A DNA stretch of 64,000 bases, from sequence record MH221129.1; one strand, 5' to 3'. The notes under the pieces were generated by a model, which was not told the DNA's origin, ran no database searches, and saw only the letters and a program-made list of their open reading frames with translations. Each line of letters starts with the position of its first letter. The stretch's first letter is position 1. Shown here one piece after another: positions 2,260 to 38,921 of this stretch. The position numbers and the translations under genes are program-made.

Positions 2260-3825
2260 ATGAATAGTAAAATGATGTTGATAACAGCCTTGGCCGCTCT
2301 CTACACAGAGTCACTCATGACTGACCCTGGTAAGGATCATGAAGTCATAAGAAAAGTGCTGTTACAGATCAAGCTCCCTGAATACGCGGAAGACGGCGAG
2401 GAGCGCTTTGCCCTCATCGAAATCAAGGATATTATCACATCCATCATAGACGGCGGCATGGATTACGACCACTCAAGCGTTATGAAACGTTTGAAGCTGG
2501 CAACCACTCAGGTACGTCCTCTATACGATACGATTACCAAATTCCTTGAGGATGATATTCCTGAGGAAGAAGACAAACGTAGTGAGCATCTCAACCGACA
2601 GCTGTCCCAATACTATTTCCAGTTACGCCAATGTATTCAGAGCGTGGAACTGAAAAACAAAATGGGTCGTGCGTTCGGTGTATTGAACGGGACGGAAACG
2701 CGAGTTGACTTGAACACCGCGGTGCTCGAACTCAAAGATGCGCTTTCCACGTTCGGCGAACGCTCTCATAATAAGATTCCATCACTCGTTGGTGAACTGG
2801 TAACGGATAACCGTGCACCGTTTATCAAGGTGTTCGACTCAATTAATAAGAAAGCAGCTGGTAATGGTTTACAGACGGGCTGGAAAGCCATTAACCAAAT
2901 GCTGGGTTGTAACAAAGGGATTACCGAAGAACTGTGGTTAATGCCCGCCTTACCGTTCAACTGTAAATCGTTGTTTAGTTTGCTGCTCTCTTTGTCGATT
3001 CCTATTTTCAACACGCCTGAGAAAGTCATGGCGGACGTGAAGGGTACACTGCAACCGATTATTCTAGACTTGAGTTTGGAGAACGAACTCGACGTCAACC
3101 TGGCATACGGTTATCAAGCGTTATACGGTCACTTCGAAGGTAAGGTACCGAACATGGTACTGCCGGAGAACGCAACAGTCGAAGAGAAGATTCTTCACAC
3201 GACGTCCATGTCTGACTATCTGTGTGACAAGATTCGTGCGAACGGCTGGGAGTACATGTTCCAAAAGCACACCAACACCGATTTTAAAGTGCATTACATC
3301 AACGACCTGATTAACGACCTGCGTGTTCGCGGTTATCATGTCGTGGGTATTCGTGCCGACTATTTAGGCACCATTAGTAAAGCTGGGCACGGCAACGGGA
3401 TTGCTGGTAGTGACATCAAAGAAATTTATCGTATCGCTCGTAACATTCAAGTGGTACGTAACCACGGCTTCTTGATTGCTCCGCATCAGATTTCTCCTGA
3501 AGGGAAACGTCTGAAGGCGCTTGACCCAATCGGCTTCTGTAAGAACTTGCCGGGTCGTGGTTTGTACGACAGCTGTTCCAGCCTCGATAACGAAGCTGAC
3601 GGCGAAATGTATTTCAACAAACGTGTTGTCAATGGTCATAGCTTCTTAGAAGTTCAACGCGGCAAACACCGCACCATTATTGATACCAAAGAGTCTCATC
3701 ACTACACAGTGATACCTTTCCAGGATGTTGGCATCCTGCCTTGGGATTGTGATAAAGAAGAAACCGTAACTGCGTCGTCTATCAACTTCTTCACCGGCGG
3801 AATGGGTGATGATTTGTTTGCGTAA
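2260..3825 (+). CDS. dnaB: DnaB-like replicative helicase (phiKZ gp118-like)
   Basis: 521 aa. TGWKAINQMLG, Walker A-like ALPFNCKS, Walker B ADYLG, HQIS and arginine-finger RGKHR. SD AAGGA. Confidence 0.85.
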   Translation: MNSKMMLITALAALYTESLMTDPGKDHEVIRKVLLQIKLPEYAEDGEERFALIEIKDIITSIIDGGMDYDHSSVMKRLKLATTQVRPLYDTITKFLEDDIPEEEDKRSEHLNRQLSQYYFQLRQCIQSVELKNKMGRAFGVLNGTETRVDLNTAVLELKDALSTFGERSHNKIPSLVGELVTDNRAPFIKVFDSINKKAAGNGLQTGWKAINQMLGCNKGITEELWLMPALPFNCKSLFSLLLSLSIPIFNTPEKVMADVKGTLQPIILDLSLENELDVNLAYGYQALYGHFEGKVPNMVLPENATVEEKILHTTSMSDYLCDKIRANGWEYMFQKHTNTDFKVHYINDLINDLRVRGYHVVGIRADYLGTISKAGHGNGIAGSDIKEIYRIARNIQVVRNHGFLIAPHQISPEGKRLKALDPIGFCKNLPGRGLYDSCSSLDNEADGEMYFNKRVVNGHSFLEVQRGKHRTIIDTKESHHYTVIPFQDVGILPWDCDKEETVTASSINFFTGGMGDDLFA

Positions 3826-35345: not shown

Positions 35346-35378
35346 AAAAAAAGAAGAAAGAGCAGGGCCGAAGCCCTG
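35346..35378 (-). terminator. Intrinsic terminator
   Basis: CAGGGC-TTCG-GCCCTG then CTCTTTCTTCTTTTTTT. Confidence 0.75.
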
Positions 35379-35381
35379 TCT

Positions 35382-35873
35382 TTATTTAGCGTGCTGTCCC
35401 GTCATTTCTTTCTCCAAGTTTTCCAGCGCGCGGTCACCTTGGATATCCTCTCCAGCTTTCTTGATAATCGCGTTGCGACGACGGATGTTGTCGAGCATCA
35501 TGAGTATCTGCCAGCGTGGACGATCGAGGAACTCGTCAATCGTTATTCGGTAATGCTCGCCAACCTGCTCGCGCAAGTACGTGGCATACCAGATATCGTA
35601 CAGACTACCAAAGATAGGGTTCTCAAATTCTGAGACCCCCACTTGGTTGTAACCGGTGTCCAACCCCAACGTACGGTCGTACGCCCCCATCAACTCGTCG
35701 TGAGCTTCTTGATACGTGATAGGTCGGACACTGCGCTGCTTGAACAGTGAGGTGGTATCCATCTTGAGCGTAGTAATGATTTGCTCGGACGGGACTTCTT
35801 CCTGGTCTAGCCAATATCGGCGTATTGATCCAGCAAGAATTTCTGAATCTCGGACACCACTCGAGAGAGCACG
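35382..35873 (-). CDS. Downstream (-1 frame) segment of a putative tail-assembly chaperone (gpT-like)
   Basis: The frame is open from 35957 through the end of the upstream gene. Its internal ATG 35762 has no SD. YRITIDEFLDRPRWQILMML resembles gpT/E'-type segments. Confidence 0.6.
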   Translation of the reverse strand, partial: RALSSGVRDSEILAGSIRRYWLDQEEVPSEQIITTLKMDTTSLFKQRSVRPITYQEAHDELMGAYDRTLGLDTGYNQVGVSEFENPIFGSLYDIWYATYLREQVGEHYRITIDEFLDRPRWQILMMLDNIRRRNAIIKKAGEDIQGDRALENLEKEMTGQHAK

Positions 35874-37870
35874 AAAAAAACCCTGTCCGGACTGATGGTA
35901 ACAATACCGCGATACATACCTTCTTTCTCGCCGTGTTGTTTCCCGCACTGTGGACAACGTTTACCCATGTAACCGAAGACTGCCAGGCGAGTACGTTCGA
36001 TGTATTCAGCGATGGCGTTTTCGAACTGCCCGACATACAGACGATCGGATGACAGTTCTTCGAGCATTTCGATAATCTTCTGCTCGTTAGTCTCTGTGAC
36101 CGGAATCGGCTGGGTTTCACCGTTCACGTCGCGGTACTCAACGACAGTAATCGATTTCACCATGTGGGCATAGCGGGTCAGGCGACGGGACTCTGCCGTT
36201 AAGCGCATGTGGTTCTCACGCTCACGTTCAGTGCCAAACTCCGCAAGGGCAGCAGTGGTAGAGGCGTTAACATCTTCAATCCAGCGTTCGGTGGAGTCGA
36301 AGAAACGACCCAGAGATGCACGACCGAATTCCACTTTAACCTGATTGTAATCAAAGATAGCTGCCGGGTCGATAGGATGAGACTTCACGTACTCTTCCTG
36401 CTCAGCCATGGTGATCATCGGACGTTCTGTACCACGCTGACGTGCCCACAGTTGTTTCTGCAGGTCCGTGAACAGACCCGTACCGAAACGAATACAGCGC
36501 GCGATGTTCAGTTTCACGGCTTCTTCGGAAGTACAGTCTTTCTCACCGCACAGCAACGTCCACGGAATCCCTGCCGGGAACTTGGCTTGTAATGGGCCAA
36601 GGATAATCAACCAGTAGTCAGCCAGGTCGACTTTCTCCAACAGCACAGTGCGCAGGTCATTACCTTCACAGTCAATGGTCGCTTCGGTAACGAACTGCAG
36701 CGCGAACTCAACCATGTGACGCATGTAAACGCCCGAGGATGAAGACAGCATCAGACCGTAAGTCTGCATCCCGATGGTCGCAGTTTCCAGCGTCAAACGC
36801 ATATCGAAGTCGCAAAGGTCACGTTCGTGCGGAGCGCGGAAGCCGACGTAGATACCCGTTGCTGGTAACCAGACCGAGTTAGGGATACCTGACTTACGAA
36901 CACGGCGCAGAGCAGCAATCGCACCAGTGTGCATGTTATCACGCGGTGAGATAGCGCCTGCAGGAGAACCACCGTCCCCGAGATCAACGCGCTGCTCCCA
37001 GGCAGTATCATCACGTTCCAGGGCACCTGAGAACGACGGCGTACCGTCTTGCAGACGCGGTGGCGTCATGTTCAGGGCACGGTAGATGCGCTCGTAGCGG
37101 TCTTTCTCTTCTTGAGAAGAGAATAACGGGCGACCATCTTTCGGTGAACGCTTGATGCTACGCAGAAAACTTTGCAGTTCTTCGGCAATCAGGTTCGGGT
37201 CTTGTGATAAACCCAGGAGCGTTGACGTCTGCAGCAGGATGGCGTTCGGATCGTCATTATCCAGTGCCGACGTTTCAGCCAGATGTTGCTTATCGCCGAA
37301 ATTAATCTGGCGCTCCACAGTTTGCTCTGGAACTTTCGGTGCAGCATCTTCGTGGTCGGCAGCTTTACGGGCAACAGGCTCTGGAGCGGTCGTTTGTTCC
37401 TGGCGTGGCACTTCTGCGTGAAGATGCGGATGTTCCATGCTCGGACCAGGCGAAGCAACCGTTACGTTCTCCGGGGCAGGTTGCGCGGGTGGTTGCTGCA
37501 CGACCGGTGCGGGTGAGTCATCGACCACGGTACCGCGGGTGACTTCCTCAACATGGGCATGTGCGGCGTACTCAACCTTTTCCGCGGTAGGAAGTGGTTC
37601 ATCGTCATACGTCGGACGTTGCAGTGGGACTTCCGGTTCTTCGGCGCGAAGCAGTTGTGGCGAGTAGTGTTCTGCGTACAAACTCTCCGCGCGGGCAAAA
37701 GAAATACCGGGATTGGATTTCTTAATCAACAACACCGCCGCTTCGCTATCCATTGTTTCGATTTGCGAGCGTGGTGGGATAACCAGCTCTTGCGCATCTT
37801 GCGATGGCGTCGGCTGATTTGGGTTGGGGCGTCGAGCATTGCTCGGGCGCTGATCCTGGATATCAGACAT
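35807..37870 (-). CDS. Zn-binding protein, putative tail/baseplate-hub assembly chaperone (phiKZ gp77 position; T4 gp26/gp51-like)
   Basis: 687 aa. Pro/Glu-rich disordered N-terminus, LCGEKDC and RCPQC motifs, ends ...DRVFF. Confidence 0.55.
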   Translation of the reverse strand: MSDIQDQRPSNARRPNPNQPTPSQDAQELVIPPRSQIETMDSEAAVLLIKKSNPGISFARAESLYAEHYSPQLLRAEEPEVPLQRPTYDDEPLPTAEKVEYAAHAHVEEVTRGTVVDDSPAPVVQQPPAQPAPENVTVASPGPSMEHPHLHAEVPRQEQTTAPEPVARKAADHEDAAPKVPEQTVERQINFGDKQHLAETSALDNDDPNAILLQTSTLLGLSQDPNLIAEELQSFLRSIKRSPKDGRPLFSSQEEKDRYERIYRALNMTPPRLQDGTPSFSGALERDDTAWEQRVDLGDGGSPAGAISPRDNMHTGAIAALRRVRKSGIPNSVWLPATGIYVGFRAPHERDLCDFDMRLTLETATIGMQTYGLMLSSSSGVYMRHMVEFALQFVTEATIDCEGNDLRTVLLEKVDLADYWLIILGPLQAKFPAGIPWTLLCGEKDCTSEEAVKLNIARCIRFGTGLFTDLQKQLWARQRGTERPMITMAEQEEYVKSHPIDPAAIFDYNQVKVEFGRASLGRFFDSTERWIEDVNASTTAALAEFGTERERENHMRLTAESRRLTRYAHMVKSITVVEYRDVNGETQPIPVTETNEQKIIEMLEELSSDRLYVGQFENAIAEYIERTRLAVFGYMGKRCPQCGKQHGEKEGMYRGIVTISPDRVFFVLSRVVSEIQKFLLDQYADIG
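35873..35883 (-). promoter_or_regulatory. -1 ribosomal frameshift slippery site GGG-UUUUUUU-C (U UUU UUC)
   Basis: 0-frame codons AGG GTT TTT TTC; the -1 frame continues CGT GCT CTC and stays open to 35382. Confidence 0.65.
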
Positions 37871-38480
37871 TGGCAGTTTCCTCTACTTCCAGCTTGACGT
37901 CGTTGTGGTCGATGGGTGCCGGCTGCATTTCTTTCGCTTGGTCGGCAATCGCATCAGCTAACAGAGCTTTCGCCTGTTCCATGGTCTGACCTTTATTCAA
38001 CGCCTGCTTAATGAACTTCACTTCTGCGTTATAACGCGAGAAGATTTCGATGCTGGTATAATGCACGTCCATCGCCAGGGCCAGACTGTCCTGTTCGATA
38101 GCGCCCATTGCAATCTGGTCAAGAACGACCTGATCTTTAATGTCTTTCCATGGTTTGCTGTGGTCGTCCAGCACCGCTAACACCGGGGTAGCGATTGCAT
38201 CCATATCGACAACCAGCTTATTATACTTCGGAGTGGCGTCAGCCCCCATGCCAATCAGGGCGGCTTTAGCGCGTTCTAACGACTCCAGGGAGAACTGCTT
38301 CAGTTCTTCGTGCGTGATGGATTCAACCACTTCACGCTCAGCGTCCACGCGACCGGCCAGGAAACTGCCGGACTCGACGAAGACGTCCTGACGTTTCAGC
38401 AGGTTTTTCATGGTCGCGACAACAGACTCACGAGCCAGTTTACGTGGGTTATAAGCGGGTTTCTTTTTGCGACGACTCAT
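37863..38480 (-). CDS. Conserved hypothetical protein
   Basis: 205 aa, basic N-terminus MSRRKKKP, SD AAGGA. Confidence 0.7.
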   Translation of the reverse strand: MSRRKKKPAYNPRKLARESVVATMKNLLKRQDVFVESGSFLAGRVDAEREVVESITHEELKQFSLESLERAKAALIGMGADATPKYNKLVVDMDAIATPVLAVLDDHSKPWKDIKDQVVLDQIAMGAIEQDSLALAMDVHYTSIEIFSRYNAEVKFIKQALNKGQTMEQAKALLADAIADQAKEMQPAPIDHNDVKLEVEETANV

Positions 38481-38537: not shown

Positions 38538-38921
38538 TTAACTTGCGTCGTGTGGGACGGTCACCCACTCGTGCCATTTCTCCGAGTACAAACGGTAGGC
38601 CATTTTCGGGTTCTGGTCGACGCTGCCTGCCGGGTTATCGTTCCACAACGTGTACGAATACAGCTCGTACGACGAAGTACCACGTATACTCGAAGTGCGG
38701 GTCACGTAATACGTGACGCCGCGTTGCAGGATGTGAAGGCCACCGTAATGTTCGGTGACCATGTAGTAGTGAAACGCCTGGTTAATCGTGGCGTCGGTGC
38801 ACAGCGCTTTAGCGACGTCTTCTACGCCGGGATATGCCTTTAGAATGTTTTCGAGAAAACTTGCTAAGGTCAGCCCGACATAGGGCGGCGTTGGCGCGGC
38901 TGGAAGCGGCGGAGTGAGCAT
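38538..38921 (-). CDS. Hypothetical (likely virion) protein
   Basis: 127 aa, SD TAAGGA with TATG upstream; the start lies inside the helicase 3' end. Confidence 0.6.
   Translation of the reverse strand: MLTPPLPAAPTPPYVGLTLASFLENILKAYPGVEDVAKALCTDATINQAFHYYMVTEHYGGLHILQRGVTYYVTRTSSIRGTSSYELYSYTLWNDNPAGSVDQNPKMAYRLYSEKWHEWVTVPHDAS

What the first reader, a model, noticed from the sequence alone, without database searches (positions are those of the whole stretch)
35382..37870. Putative -1 programmed frameshift: a hidden G/GT-type tail-assembly chaperone pair in a jumbo phage
Seen: the 687-aa ORF reads AGG GTT TTT TTC at codons 663-666, a U-UUU-UUC heptamer within GGG-T7-C (35873-35883). The next ORF is in the -1 frame, already open across this site and open to 35382, and its first ATG (35762) has no SD. 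Tandem slippage gives an 829-aa fusion (...DRVFF-RALSSGVRDSE...). A weak hairpin TCTCG-N9-CGAGA follows. Knowledge: lambda G/GT and P2 E/E' chaperones use -1 slippage, at a T-run in P2, and T4 gp26/gp51-type chaperones carry CxxC motifs like the LCGEKDC/RCPQC here. Inference: this is the chimallivirus equivalent, sitting far from the tail genes and so easily annotated as two unrelated hypotheticals. I do not know of it being described for phiKZ-like phages.
Basis: partly seen in the sequence, partly recalled or inferred. Interest (0 to 1): 0.85.

Follow-up and report, generated by a model that had tools for sequence, protein, structure and literature searches.

The report
Conserved -1 frameshift in jumbo-phage core gene
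A run of seven T's near the end of a 687-codon gene of this SPN3US-like giant Salmonella phage is very probably a programmed -1 ribosomal frameshift site, kept in every related nucleus-forming jumbo phage examined, that makes a second, longer form of an early non-structural protein; it is not a tail-assembly chaperone pair.

Summary
The 687-aa ORF (37870-35807, minus strand) reads AGG GTT TTT TTC at codons 663-666. This gives an in-phase U_UUU_UUC heptamer at 35879-35873. The -1 frame is open across it and runs 163 codons to 35382. The ATG at 35762 has no Shine-Dalgarno.

Comparative evidence strongly supports a real recoding site:
- All 22 phages examined, from nine-plus genera including phiKZ, PhiPA3 and a Bacillus jumbo phage, keep a T5-T8 run at the same Phe-Phe position.
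- All have a -1 ORF that runs 122-159 codons past the stop.
- The window's ATG is a Leu codon in most relatives, and five phages have no start codon at all.
- The 44-nt "intergenic" spacer evolves like coding sequence in the -1 frame.
- Synonymous change is halved in the overlap.
- This is the only sense T-run of six or more in 44.8 kb of coding sequence here.

The gene is the phiKZ gp77 homologue. It sits among RNA polymerase, helicase and DNA polymerase genes. A homologue is a non-structural protein detected 15 min after infection. It matches no tail-chaperone or T4 gp26/gp51 family. Its function remains unknown. No paper or genome record I could reach describes this frameshift.

The parts
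35807..37870 (-). 0-frame ORF, 687 aa. It is the homologue of phiKZ gp77 / PhiPA3 gp074 / SPN3US YP_009153333 (phrog_8054). The N-terminal ~250 aa are variable and predicted disordered. The conserved core runs from about residue 270 to 687 and holds four invariant Cys (441, 446, 639, 642).
35873..35879 (-). Slippery heptamer T_TTT_TTC (U_UUU_UUC) in the X_XXY_YYZ phase. The P-site codon is 665 (TTT) and the A-site codon is 666 (TTC). It lies inside GGG-T7-C at 35883-35873.
   Evidence: Invariant in 15 distinct sequences of the SPN3US-like clade. In-phase U-run variants occur in all 22 phages.
35382..35873 (-). -1 frame coding segment read after the shift: 163 codons plus TAA. It consists of a ~50-aa variable or disordered linker followed by a conserved ~100-aa helical domain (phrog_7580 / phrog_12109).
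35807..35872 (-). Dual-coding overlap of 66 nt. The 0-frame encodes a 21-aa tail plus stop, while the -1 frame encodes the start of the linker.
   Evidence: Nucleotide diversity is 0.22 against 0.40 upstream. The synonymous-difference rate is 0.218 against a mean of 0.451; none of 382 other windows is as low.
35763..35806 (-). The 44 nt annotated as intergenic. It evolves as coding sequence in the -1 frame.
   Evidence: Codon-position diversity is 0.36/0.23/0.61, like the downstream ORF (0.32/0.17/0.56), and there are no indels in 15 sequences.
35760..35762 (-). Annotated ATG start of the 126-aa ORF. It is most likely an internal Met/Leu codon.
   Evidence: No SD. The codon is ATG in 3, TTG in 1 and CTN in 11 of 15 clade sequences.
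35848..35866 (-). It is not supported as a stimulator.
35363..35378 (-). Terminator-like GC hairpin followed by a T-rich tail, directly after the -1 ORF stop. It probably marks the end of the transcription unit.
37863..38480 (-). Upstream neighbour of 205 aa, the phiKZ gp78 homologue (phrog_8045). It overlaps the start of the big ORF by 8 nt. It is context, not part of the recoding signal.

Best explanation
This is a programmed -1 ribosomal frameshift in the phiKZ-gp77-family gene.

Shown:
- An in-phase U_UUU_UUC heptamer sits 21 codons before the 0-frame stop.
- The -1 frame is open across it.
- The site, the overlap and the -1 protein are conserved across the phiKZ-like jumbo phage lineage.

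Inferred:
- With tRNA-Phe on codon 665 (UUU, P site) and codon 666 (UUC, A site), a fraction of ribosomes slip back one base, and both tRNAs re-pair with UUU.
- Those ribosomes then read 163 further codons in the -1 frame. The product is a ~829-aa isoform that replaces the 21-aa C-terminal helix of the 687-aa form with a flexible linker and a ~100-aa helical domain.
- Ribosomes that do not slip stop at UAG 35809-35807. Two isoforms sharing 666 residues would thus be made at a fixed ratio from one mRNA.
- The separately annotated 126-aa gene is therefore not, or not mainly, an independent gene.

The protein is an early, non-structural, Zn-binding-type core protein of unknown function in the replication/transcription gene block. 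It is not a tail-assembly chaperone. The extension probably works as an adaptor that couples part of the protein pool to a partner. That last step is inference only.
For: Conservation of the site:
- All 22 phages checked keep a T5-T8 run at the conserved Phe-Phe position, in phase. They include Seoulvirus, Erskinevirus, Machinavirus, Wellingtonvirus, Derbicusvirus, Phikzvirus, Miltoncavirus, Moabitevirus, Noxifervirus, Chiangmaivirus, Agricanvirus, a Vibrio phage and a Bacillus phage.
- The heptamers are T_TTT_TTC in 10 phages, T_TTT_TTT in 7, T_TTT_TTA in 1 and G_TTT_TTY in 3. One phage has only the U_UU.U tetramer.
- The run goes against codon bias. In RSL2, 0 of 18 other Phe codons are TTT, yet the site reads GTT TTT TTT; PhiPA3 has 2 of 21. 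In the window, 24 of 25 Phe-Phe pairs start with TTC.

The -1 frame as coding sequence:
- In every phage the -1 frame opens 12-195 nt before the site and continues 122-159 codons past the 0-frame stop. Its translation aligns family-wide.
- The start codon is not conserved. Five phages have no ATG/GTG/TTG before the conserved domain. Only the Vibrio phage, which has the degenerate site, has ATG plus an AGGAG SD. Annotators' start positions scatter widely.
- The 44-nt spacer shows -1-frame codon periodicity and no indels.
- The synonymous rate in the overlap is 0.218 against 0.451 +/- 0.038; 0 of 382 windows are as low.
- The -1 domain is never found as an in-frame C-terminal domain. All 75 representative homologues are small ORFs or spurious hits.

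Literature:
- In E. coli, H_HH.U_UU.Y heptamers are in the most efficient class, and U_UU.Y is the second-best tetramer (PMC4066793).
Against: - There is no direct evidence of the long protein. I found no proteomic, ribosome-profiling or immunoblot data.
- No significant 3' stimulatory RNA structure was found in any of the 22 phages (z is near 0 in most and no lower than -1.8). There is also no Rfam match. Efficiency may therefore be low.
- The Phe-Phe motif is itself conserved at protein level. Part of the T-richness and its phase is thus inherited rather than independently selected.
- A T7 run could also support RNA polymerase slippage.
- Three close relatives, including this window, do have an ATG in the -1 ORF, so some independent initiation cannot be excluded.
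Confidence: 0.75

Rival explanations
1. Transcriptional slippage. The phage (or host) RNA polymerase stutters on the T-run and adds one U to a fraction of transcripts. Ribosomes then reach the -1 ORF by standard decoding. The products would be the same but the mechanism different.
For: - The signal is a pure homopolymer (T7 here, T8 in RSL2 and Simmy50).
- No RNA stimulator was found.
- UUUUUUU is under-represented in all three frames of E. coli genes, which has been ascribed partly to transcriptional slippage (PMC4066793).
- The slippage properties of the phage-encoded multisubunit RNA polymerases are unknown.
Against: - Several lineages keep only T5 or T6 (Noxifer, the Vibrio phage, PhiPA3, FLC9). 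From general knowledge, this is shorter than the runs of about nine that known bacterial RNA polymerase slippage sites use.
- All of these lineages nonetheless retain an in-phase U_UU.Y tetramer or heptamer, which is what ribosomal slippage needs.
- The +1 frame, which loss of one U would reach, is short and not conserved.
Confidence: 0.14
2. There are two independent genes. The downstream ORF is translated on its own from ATG 35762, from a non-canonical start, or by termination-reinitiation after the UAG. The T-run would then be just the codons of a conserved Phe-Phe motif.
For: - All 22 fetched database records annotate two separate genes; none carries a joined CDS.
- The window, SPN3US and pEa29 have an ATG 44 nt after the stop.
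- The PHROG profile of the small protein starts at that ATG.
- The Vibrio phage has ATG with a good SD.
Against: - The ATG has no SD, whereas 45 of 47 genes in the window do.
- That codon encodes Leu in 11 of 15 clade sequences.
- Five phages have no canonical start before the conserved domain.
- Coding periodicity and amino-acid conservation in the -1 frame extend upstream of the ATG, through the spacer and into the overlap up to the heptamer.
- TTT-TTY is used against strong TTC bias.
Confidence: 0.06
3. One reading: the pair is the chimallivirus equivalent of the lambda G/GT or P2 E/E' tail-assembly chaperone, or a T4 gp51-type baseplate hub assembly factor, relocated away from the tail genes.
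For: [quoted passage not shown]
- The protein is not reported in SPN3US virion mass spectrometry (PMC10052503, PMC5694885).
- The upstream neighbour appears to be SPN3US gp38, by my inferred numbering. gp38 is a low-abundance virion protein tentatively assigned to the tail.
- A few public records name homologues 'baseplate hub (assembly) protein' or 'Baseplate protein'.
- T4 gp26 and gp51 carry similar Cys pairs, and hhalign gives a collinear but non-significant alignment.
Against: - The size is wrong (687 aa).
- The gene lies in the RNA polymerase / helicase / DNA polymerase block.
- There is no hit to any tail-chaperone family, to PF12322 or to phrog_150.
- hhalign probability is 1.4-1.5%.
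- Foldseek returns no tail or baseplate structure, though the model is poor.
- The Churi homologue is detected early, at 15 min, and is classed as non-structural.
Confidence: 0.05

Closest known systems
Lambda gpG/gpGT (and P2 E/E') tail-assembly chaperone frameshift
   Same: [quoted passage not shown] The short and long forms share the N-terminal body. The long form gains an extra domain at a fixed low ratio. The -1 ORF has no start of its own. P2 uses a T-run, according to the finding and to my own knowledge. The lambda mechanism is described in PMC5009743.
   Different: Here the upstream product is 687 aa rather than about 140 aa. The gene is not next to tail tube or tape measure genes. There is no sequence-family match. 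A homologue is expressed early. The function is unknown.
Phage T7 gene 10A/10B
   Same: Both are -1 frameshifts on a U-rich site ending UUU_UUC; the review PMC5009743 gives G_GU for the X_XX part. Both add a C-terminal extension to a minority of molecules. Neither has a simple adjacent hairpin.
   Different: T7 10A/10B is the major capsid protein, a late structural protein. Here the protein is non-structural and early, and the extension is about three times longer.
IS3/IS1-family OrfA-OrfB transposase frameshift
   Same: Both produce a trans-frame fusion whose second ORF lacks its own start. U_UU.U_UU.C is among the heptamers these elements use (PMC4066793).
   Different: Most IS sites are A_AAA_AAG with a pseudoknot or hairpin, and the fusion is a transposase. 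No such structure or enzyme signature is present here.
Bacterial dnaX tau/gamma frameshift
   Same: Both are -1 frameshifts in a gene of the replication neighbourhood, and both set the ratio of two isoforms (my own knowledge).
   Different: In dnaX the shift truncates the protein almost at once, and it uses A_AAA_AAG with an upstream SD-like element and a strong hairpin. Here the shift extends the protein by 163 residues, and no stimulators were detected.
T4 gp26 / gp51 (Pfam PF12322 T4_baseplate, phrog_150)
   Same: Both have two separated Cys pairs, including a CPxCGKxH-like motif near the C-terminus. Some database records give homologues the same name.
   Different: There is no HMM match. 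Profile-profile probability is 1.4-1.5%. The sizes differ (208-249 aa against 687 aa), as does the genomic context.

Membership tests
-1 programmed ribosomal frameshift site (tandem slippage) | X_XXY_YYZ heptamer in the 0-frame phase | tested here: met
   The site is T_TTT_TTC at 35879-35873, codons 664(3rd base)-666.
-1 programmed ribosomal frameshift site (tandem slippage) | The -1 ORF is open across the site and gives a substantial extension | tested here: met
   There are 163 codons after the site in the window, and 122-159 codons past the stop in all 22 phages.
-1 programmed ribosomal frameshift site (tandem slippage) | The shift site and the overlap are conserved in orthologues | tested here: met
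   The heptamer is invariant in 15 clade sequences. An in-phase U-run is present in 22 of 22 phages across nine-plus genera, against codon bias.
-1 programmed ribosomal frameshift site (tandem slippage) | The downstream frame carries a coding signature upstream of any start codon, and no start is conserved | tested here: met
   The spacer shows -1-frame periodicity. ATG is replaced by CTN in 11 of 15 sequences. Five phages have no start.
-1 programmed ribosomal frameshift site (tandem slippage) | Synonymous variation is suppressed in the overlap | tested here: met
   The rate is 0.218 against 0.451 +/- 0.038, and 0 of 382 windows are as low.
-1 programmed ribosomal frameshift site (tandem slippage) | A 3' stimulatory hairpin or pseudoknot, or a 5' SD-like element | tested here: not met
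   Folding energy is not significant in any of the 22 phages (most z near 0, lowest -1.8). RNAalifold shows no covariation. There is no Rfam hit. This feature is usual but not obligatory.
-1 programmed ribosomal frameshift site (tandem slippage) | The trans-frame protein is detected | not testable with these tools
   I found no proteomic or profiling data for the junction.
Tail-assembly chaperone G/GT (lambda) or E/E' (P2) | The gene pair lies between the tail tube / major tail gene and the tape measure gene | tested here: not met
   The neighbours are RNA polymerase subunits, a helicase and a DNA polymerase. The SPN3US tape measure is gp239, far away (PMC10052503).
Tail-assembly chaperone G/GT (lambda) or E/E' (P2) | The upstream product is small (about 100-150 aa) | tested here: not met
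   It is 687 aa here, and 476-721 aa in relatives.
Tail-assembly chaperone G/GT (lambda) or E/E' (P2) | A match to a known tail-chaperone protein family | tested here: not met
   There is no Pfam, NCBIfam or annotated PHROG hit for either part, nor for 11 + 18 relatives. Foldseek found none either, though the models are poor.
Tail-assembly chaperone G/GT (lambda) or E/E' (P2) | A -1 frameshift near the 3' end gives a C-terminally extended form | tested here: met
   See the frameshift rows above.
Tail-assembly chaperone G/GT (lambda) or E/E' (P2) | Late expression together with tail genes | tested here: not met
   The Churi homologue of phiKZ gp077 is detected at 15 min after infection among non-structural proteins (PMC11849849). 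This is literature evidence on a relative, not on this phage.
T4_baseplate (PF12322; T4 gp26 / gp51) | A match to the family HMM | tested here: not met
   T4 gp26 and gp51 hit PF12322 and phrog_150 strongly. The window protein and 10 relatives do not, even at E <= 1 for Pfam and E <= 0.01 for PHROGs.
T4_baseplate (PF12322; T4 gp26 / gp51) | Profile-profile or structural similarity | tested here: inconclusive
   hhalign of 22 against 24 sequences gives probability 1.4-1.5% and P 0.03-0.04, collinear over about 200 columns; the reversed control gives P 0.45. The AF2 model is too poor (pLDDT 51) for a fold test.

The most novel reading that the evidence does not exclude
The frameshift is an ancient, obligatory feature of the whole phiKZ-like lineage, from Pseudomonas, Ralstonia, Burkholderia, Vibrio and enterobacterial nucleus-forming phages to a Bacillus jumbo phage. 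The two parts are never fused in frame in any lineage. This suggests that the ratio of a short and a long isoform of this early, non-structural, Cys4 core protein is itself essential. The -1 domain may act as an adaptor that tethers a set fraction of the protein to a partner in the replication/transcription compartment. This would be a previously unrecognised layer of gene expression control in nucleus-forming phages, and it would call for re-annotating about 200 genomes.
Probability: 0.35. Interest if true: 0.75.

Novelty: new member of a known kind. Interest (0 to 1): 0.62.

Why it matters
Programmed -1 frameshifting is well known in phages for tail chaperones, some capsid proteins and IS elements. 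I found no description of one in a core non-structural gene of the nucleus-forming jumbo phages. None of the 22 genome records I fetched annotates it. The downstream ORF is given arbitrary, often truncated starts. In phiKZ-type records only the last 81 of about 165 codons are annotated.

Recognising the site has three consequences:
- It defines a new protein of about 92 kDa in SPN3US-like phages, about 76 kDa in phiKZ by codon count.
- It corrects the annotation of a gene pair present in 198 phage records.
- It flags the gp77 family as a protein whose two isoforms deserve functional study in a group of phages now heavily studied for their nucleus-like compartment and for therapy.

The site also works, apparently, without an obvious RNA stimulator. 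That gives it some interest for the recoding field.

Tried and rejected
- **Sequence-family searches.** Pfam, NCBIfam, PHROGs and PDB sequence searches of both parts, and of alignments of relatives, gave no informative hit.
- **Structure prediction.** The big-protein model is poor (pLDDT 51). The -1 part is confident only for a helical segment at about residues 90-140.
- **Foldseek.** Against the PDB it gave nothing. Against BFVD it gave only family members.
- **T4 gp26/gp51.** I fetched them from NC_000866, an accession shown by the papers. Only the Cys motif aligns, and the hhalign score is not significant. The upstream gp78-like protein and the -1 domain show nothing against T4_baseplate.
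- **RNA stimulators.** RNAalifold, per-phage folding with shuffles, and Rfam found no supported structure.
- **In-frame fusions.** A profile search of 1.84 billion representatives found none. P0061 looked like one, but it changes frame about 30 codons before the T-run, so it is probably an assembly indel.
- **Literature.** Searches for phiKZ gp77, jumbo-phage or Chimalliviridae frameshifting found nothing relevant. Several 'gp77' hits were unrelated proteins of other phages.
- **Second alignment-based protein search.** It added no distant members.
- **Joined product.** I did not build or fold the joined two-frame product.
Full report
**What the window is.** The region is 100% identical to Salmonella phages STsAS and SPAsTU. 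These are Seoulvirus members, that is, SPN3US-like jumbo phages related to phiKZ. All genes discussed here are on the minus strand. The local order is:
- two RNA-polymerase-subunit genes, annotated beta and beta' (44902-40560)
- helicase (40515-38809)
- a 205-aa gene (38480-37863)
- the 687-aa ORF (37870-35807)
- the annotated 126-aa ORF (35762-35382)
- a 287-aa gene
- another RNA polymerase beta-like subunit
- a divergent DNA polymerase

Notes in the PhiPA3 record identify the 687-aa ORF family as phiKZ gp077 / PhiPA3 gp074 / 201phi2-1 gp136 / EL gp47. They identify the upstream gene as phiKZ gp078, and the downstream ORF as PhiPA3 gp073 / 201phi2-1 gp135.

**Checking the observation.**
- Codons 663-666 are AGG GTT TTT TTC. 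This places T_TTT_TTC at 35879-35873 in the canonical X_XXY_YYZ phase.
- The 0-frame stops 21 codons later, at TAG 35809-35807.
- The -1 frame is open from 35957 through the site to TAA 35384-35382, which is 163 codons after the shift.
- The first ATG in that frame, at 35762, lacks any SD-like motif. 45 of 47 annotated starts in the window have one.
- A terminator-like hairpin follows the -1 ORF directly.
- The proposed 5-bp hairpin exists but is not distinguishable from chance.

The T-run is exceptional for this genome. In 44.8 kb of annotated coding sequence it is the only sense T-run of six or more and the only homopolymeric in-frame heptamer. Phe is encoded by TTC 412 times and by TTT 173 times. 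Of 25 Phe-Phe pairs, 24 start with TTC, and the single TTT-TTC pair is this site.

**Comparative test.** tblastn finds the big protein in 198 phage records. I fetched 21 loci before knowing what their junctions looked like and analysed them with scripts.

Every one has a T5-T8 run at the same conserved Phe-Phe position near the end of the big ORF. Every one also has a -1 ORF that opens shortly before the run and continues 122-159 codons beyond the 0-frame stop. The heptamers are:

| Heptamer | Phages |
|---|---|
| T_TTT_TTC | the SPN3US / Erskinevirus / Machinavirus / Wellingtonvirus / Derbicusvirus clade |
| T_TTT_TTT | phiKZ-type KTN4, Moabite, SA002, RSL2, LPKP23, PCH45, Simmy50 |
| T_TTT_TTA | Bacillus phage AgentSmith |
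| G_TTT_TTY | PhiPA3, FLC9, Noxifer |
| CTT_TTT (only the U_UU.U tetramer) | Vibrio phage pVp-JHP1101 |

The residue before Phe-Phe varies (V, L, T, G, A), yet its codon ends in T in 18 of 22 phages. The site also uses TTT against strong TTC bias. In RSL2, 0 of 18 other Phe codons are TTT. The figures are 2 of 21 in PhiPA3, 2 of 13 in FLC9 and 2 of 14 in PCH45.

**The downstream ORF has no conserved start.** At the position of the window's ATG, 15 distinct sequences of the SPN3US-like clade have ATG three times, TTG once and CTN (Leu) eleven times. Five of the 22 phages have no ATG, GTG or TTG anywhere between the shift site and the conserved domain: ChrisDB, EarlPhillipIV, KTN4/phiKZ, AgentSmith and Simmy50. 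Only the Vibrio phage, the one with the degenerate slippery site, has an ATG preceded by AGGAG. Annotators have accordingly chosen starts from 31 nt before to 165 nt after the upstream stop. In KTN4 they annotate only the last 81 codons.

**Coding signatures.** In the 15-sequence clade alignment the heptamer is invariant.
- The 44-nt 'intergenic' spacer has no indels. Its diversity at -1-frame codon positions is 0.36/0.23/0.61. This matches the downstream ORF (0.32/0.17/0.56).
- Overall diversity in the 66-nt overlap falls to 0.22, from 0.40 upstream.
- A synonymous-site analysis of the last ~410 codons gives a synonymous-difference rate of 0.218 in the overlap. The mean over 382 other 22-codon windows is 0.451 (sd 0.038, minimum 0.335). 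None is as low.
- The -1 translations align across the whole family. They show a variable linker followed by a conserved domain of about 100 aa.
- A profile search of 1.84 billion representative proteins finds 75 homologues of that domain. Apart from a few long, multi-stretch hits that look spurious, all are small stand-alone ORFs with ragged N-termini. None is the in-frame C-terminus of a large protein. The one apparent exception, P0061, changes frame about 30 codons before the T-run and is probably an assembly indel.

**Mechanism.** The best reading is tandem -1 slippage of the two tRNA-Phe on U_UUU_UUC. About 21 further codons are read in the 0-frame by non-shifting ribosomes, and 163 codons by shifting ones. 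In E. coli, H_HH.U_UU.Y heptamers belong to the most efficient class. U_UU.Y is the second-best tetramer, and U_UU.U_UU.C is used by IS elements (PMC4066793). This also covers the G_UUU_UUY and CUU_UUU variants.

I found no supported stimulatory RNA. Folding of the 70 nt downstream is not significantly better than shuffles in any of the 22 phages; most z-scores are near 0 and the lowest is -1.8. There is no covariation and no Rfam hit.

The synonymous rate is also lowered just upstream of the site (0.29). RNAalifold pairs CGGACA, immediately 5' of the run, with UGUCCG 27 nt downstream. This remains unexplained.

RNA polymerase slippage on the homopolymer is the main mechanistic rival. It is disfavoured by lineages with only T5-T6, but it cannot be excluded without transcript data.

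**Function.** Neither part matches any Pfam, NCBIfam, annotated PHROG or PDB sequence.
- *Big protein.* It has a variable N-terminal region of about 250 aa that is predicted to be disordered. Its conserved core has four invariant cysteines in two pairs about 195 residues apart.
- *Structure models.* The AlphaFold models are poor for the big protein (mean pLDDT 51). The -1 part is mixed at 63.5, with a confident helical segment at about residues 90-140 and a low-confidence first 50 residues.
- *Foldseek.* It finds nothing in the PDB, and only family members in BFVD. One of those is auto-named 'Baseplate protein'.
- *T4 comparison.* Some records call homologues 'baseplate hub (assembly) protein'. 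I therefore compared the family with T4 gp26 and gp51, which are PF12322 / phrog_150. Only the CPxCGKxH-type motif aligns with single sequences. Family-to-family hhalign gives 1.4-1.5% probability (P 0.03-0.04, reversed control 0.45). This is inconclusive and not evidence of homology.
- *Literature.* SPN3US virion mass spectrometry does not report this protein. It does report gp38, which I infer from locus-tag arithmetic to be the upstream 205-aa gene, as a low-abundance protein tentatively assigned to the tail (PMC10052503, PMC5694885). The Churi homologue of phiKZ gp077 is listed among non-structural proteins detected 15 min after infection (PMC11849849).

Together with the genomic neighbourhood, this argues against a lambda G/GT-type tail chaperone. 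I therefore describe it as working like G/GT or T7 10A/10B, with two isoforms at a fixed ratio and the long one carrying an extra domain. I do not file it as a member of either family.

**Novelty.** I found no paper on a frameshift in phiKZ gp77 or in any Chimalliviridae core gene. The held part of the large recoding review does not mention phiKZ or jumbo phages. None of the 22 fetched records carries a joined CDS. The library lacks many subscription journals, so prior description cannot be excluded. I rate it a new member of a known kind.

Noticed in passing
window 38538-38921 (-): A 127-aa ORF with an AAGGA SD 7 nt before its ATG overlaps the 3' end of the helicase gene by 113 nt. It is annotated in SPN3US, Asesino, Machina and Wellington but is missing from the SPAsTU record.
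   Followed up: partly
L012 (Vibrio phage pVp-JHP1101) about 3014-3508: This is the only phage whose slippery site is reduced to a U_UU.U tetramer (CTT_TTT). It is also the only one whose downstream ORF has an ATG with an AGGAG SD. It may be a lineage that switched to independent initiation.
   Followed up: partly
window about 35880-35950 (-), just 5' of the heptamer: Synonymous variation is also reduced in the 22 codons upstream of the shift site (0.29 against a mean of 0.45). CGGACA, next to the T-run, can pair with UGUCCG 27 nt downstream, but without covariation. The meaning is unknown.
   Followed up: partly
protein P0061 (metagenome ORF, 312 aa): It follows the big protein's 0-frame to about residue 632. 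It then continues in the -1 frame from about 30 codons before the T-run and so skips the second Cys pair. It is either an assembly indel or a natural variant.
   Followed up: partly
SPFM-series Salmonella phage records (proteins P0022-P0025, P0034, P0037, P0042, P0047, P0121): These near-identical SPN3US-like genomes carry fragmented or odd ORFs at this locus. This probably reflects sequencing or assembly errors rather than biology.
   Followed up: no
homologues in public records (H58, H80, H81; P0120; BFVD A0A8S5P0M5): Third-party names for the family are inconsistent: 'putative baseplate hub assembly protein', 'baseplate hub', 'Baseplate protein', and 'DNA-directed RNA polymerase subunit F' for a JGI fragment. 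None is backed by a family match that I could reproduce.
   Followed up: partly
window 35362-35379, both strands: One GC-rich hairpin is followed by T-rich tracts on both strands, so it scores as terminator-like in both directions. It lies between the -1 ORF and the next gene.
   Followed up: no
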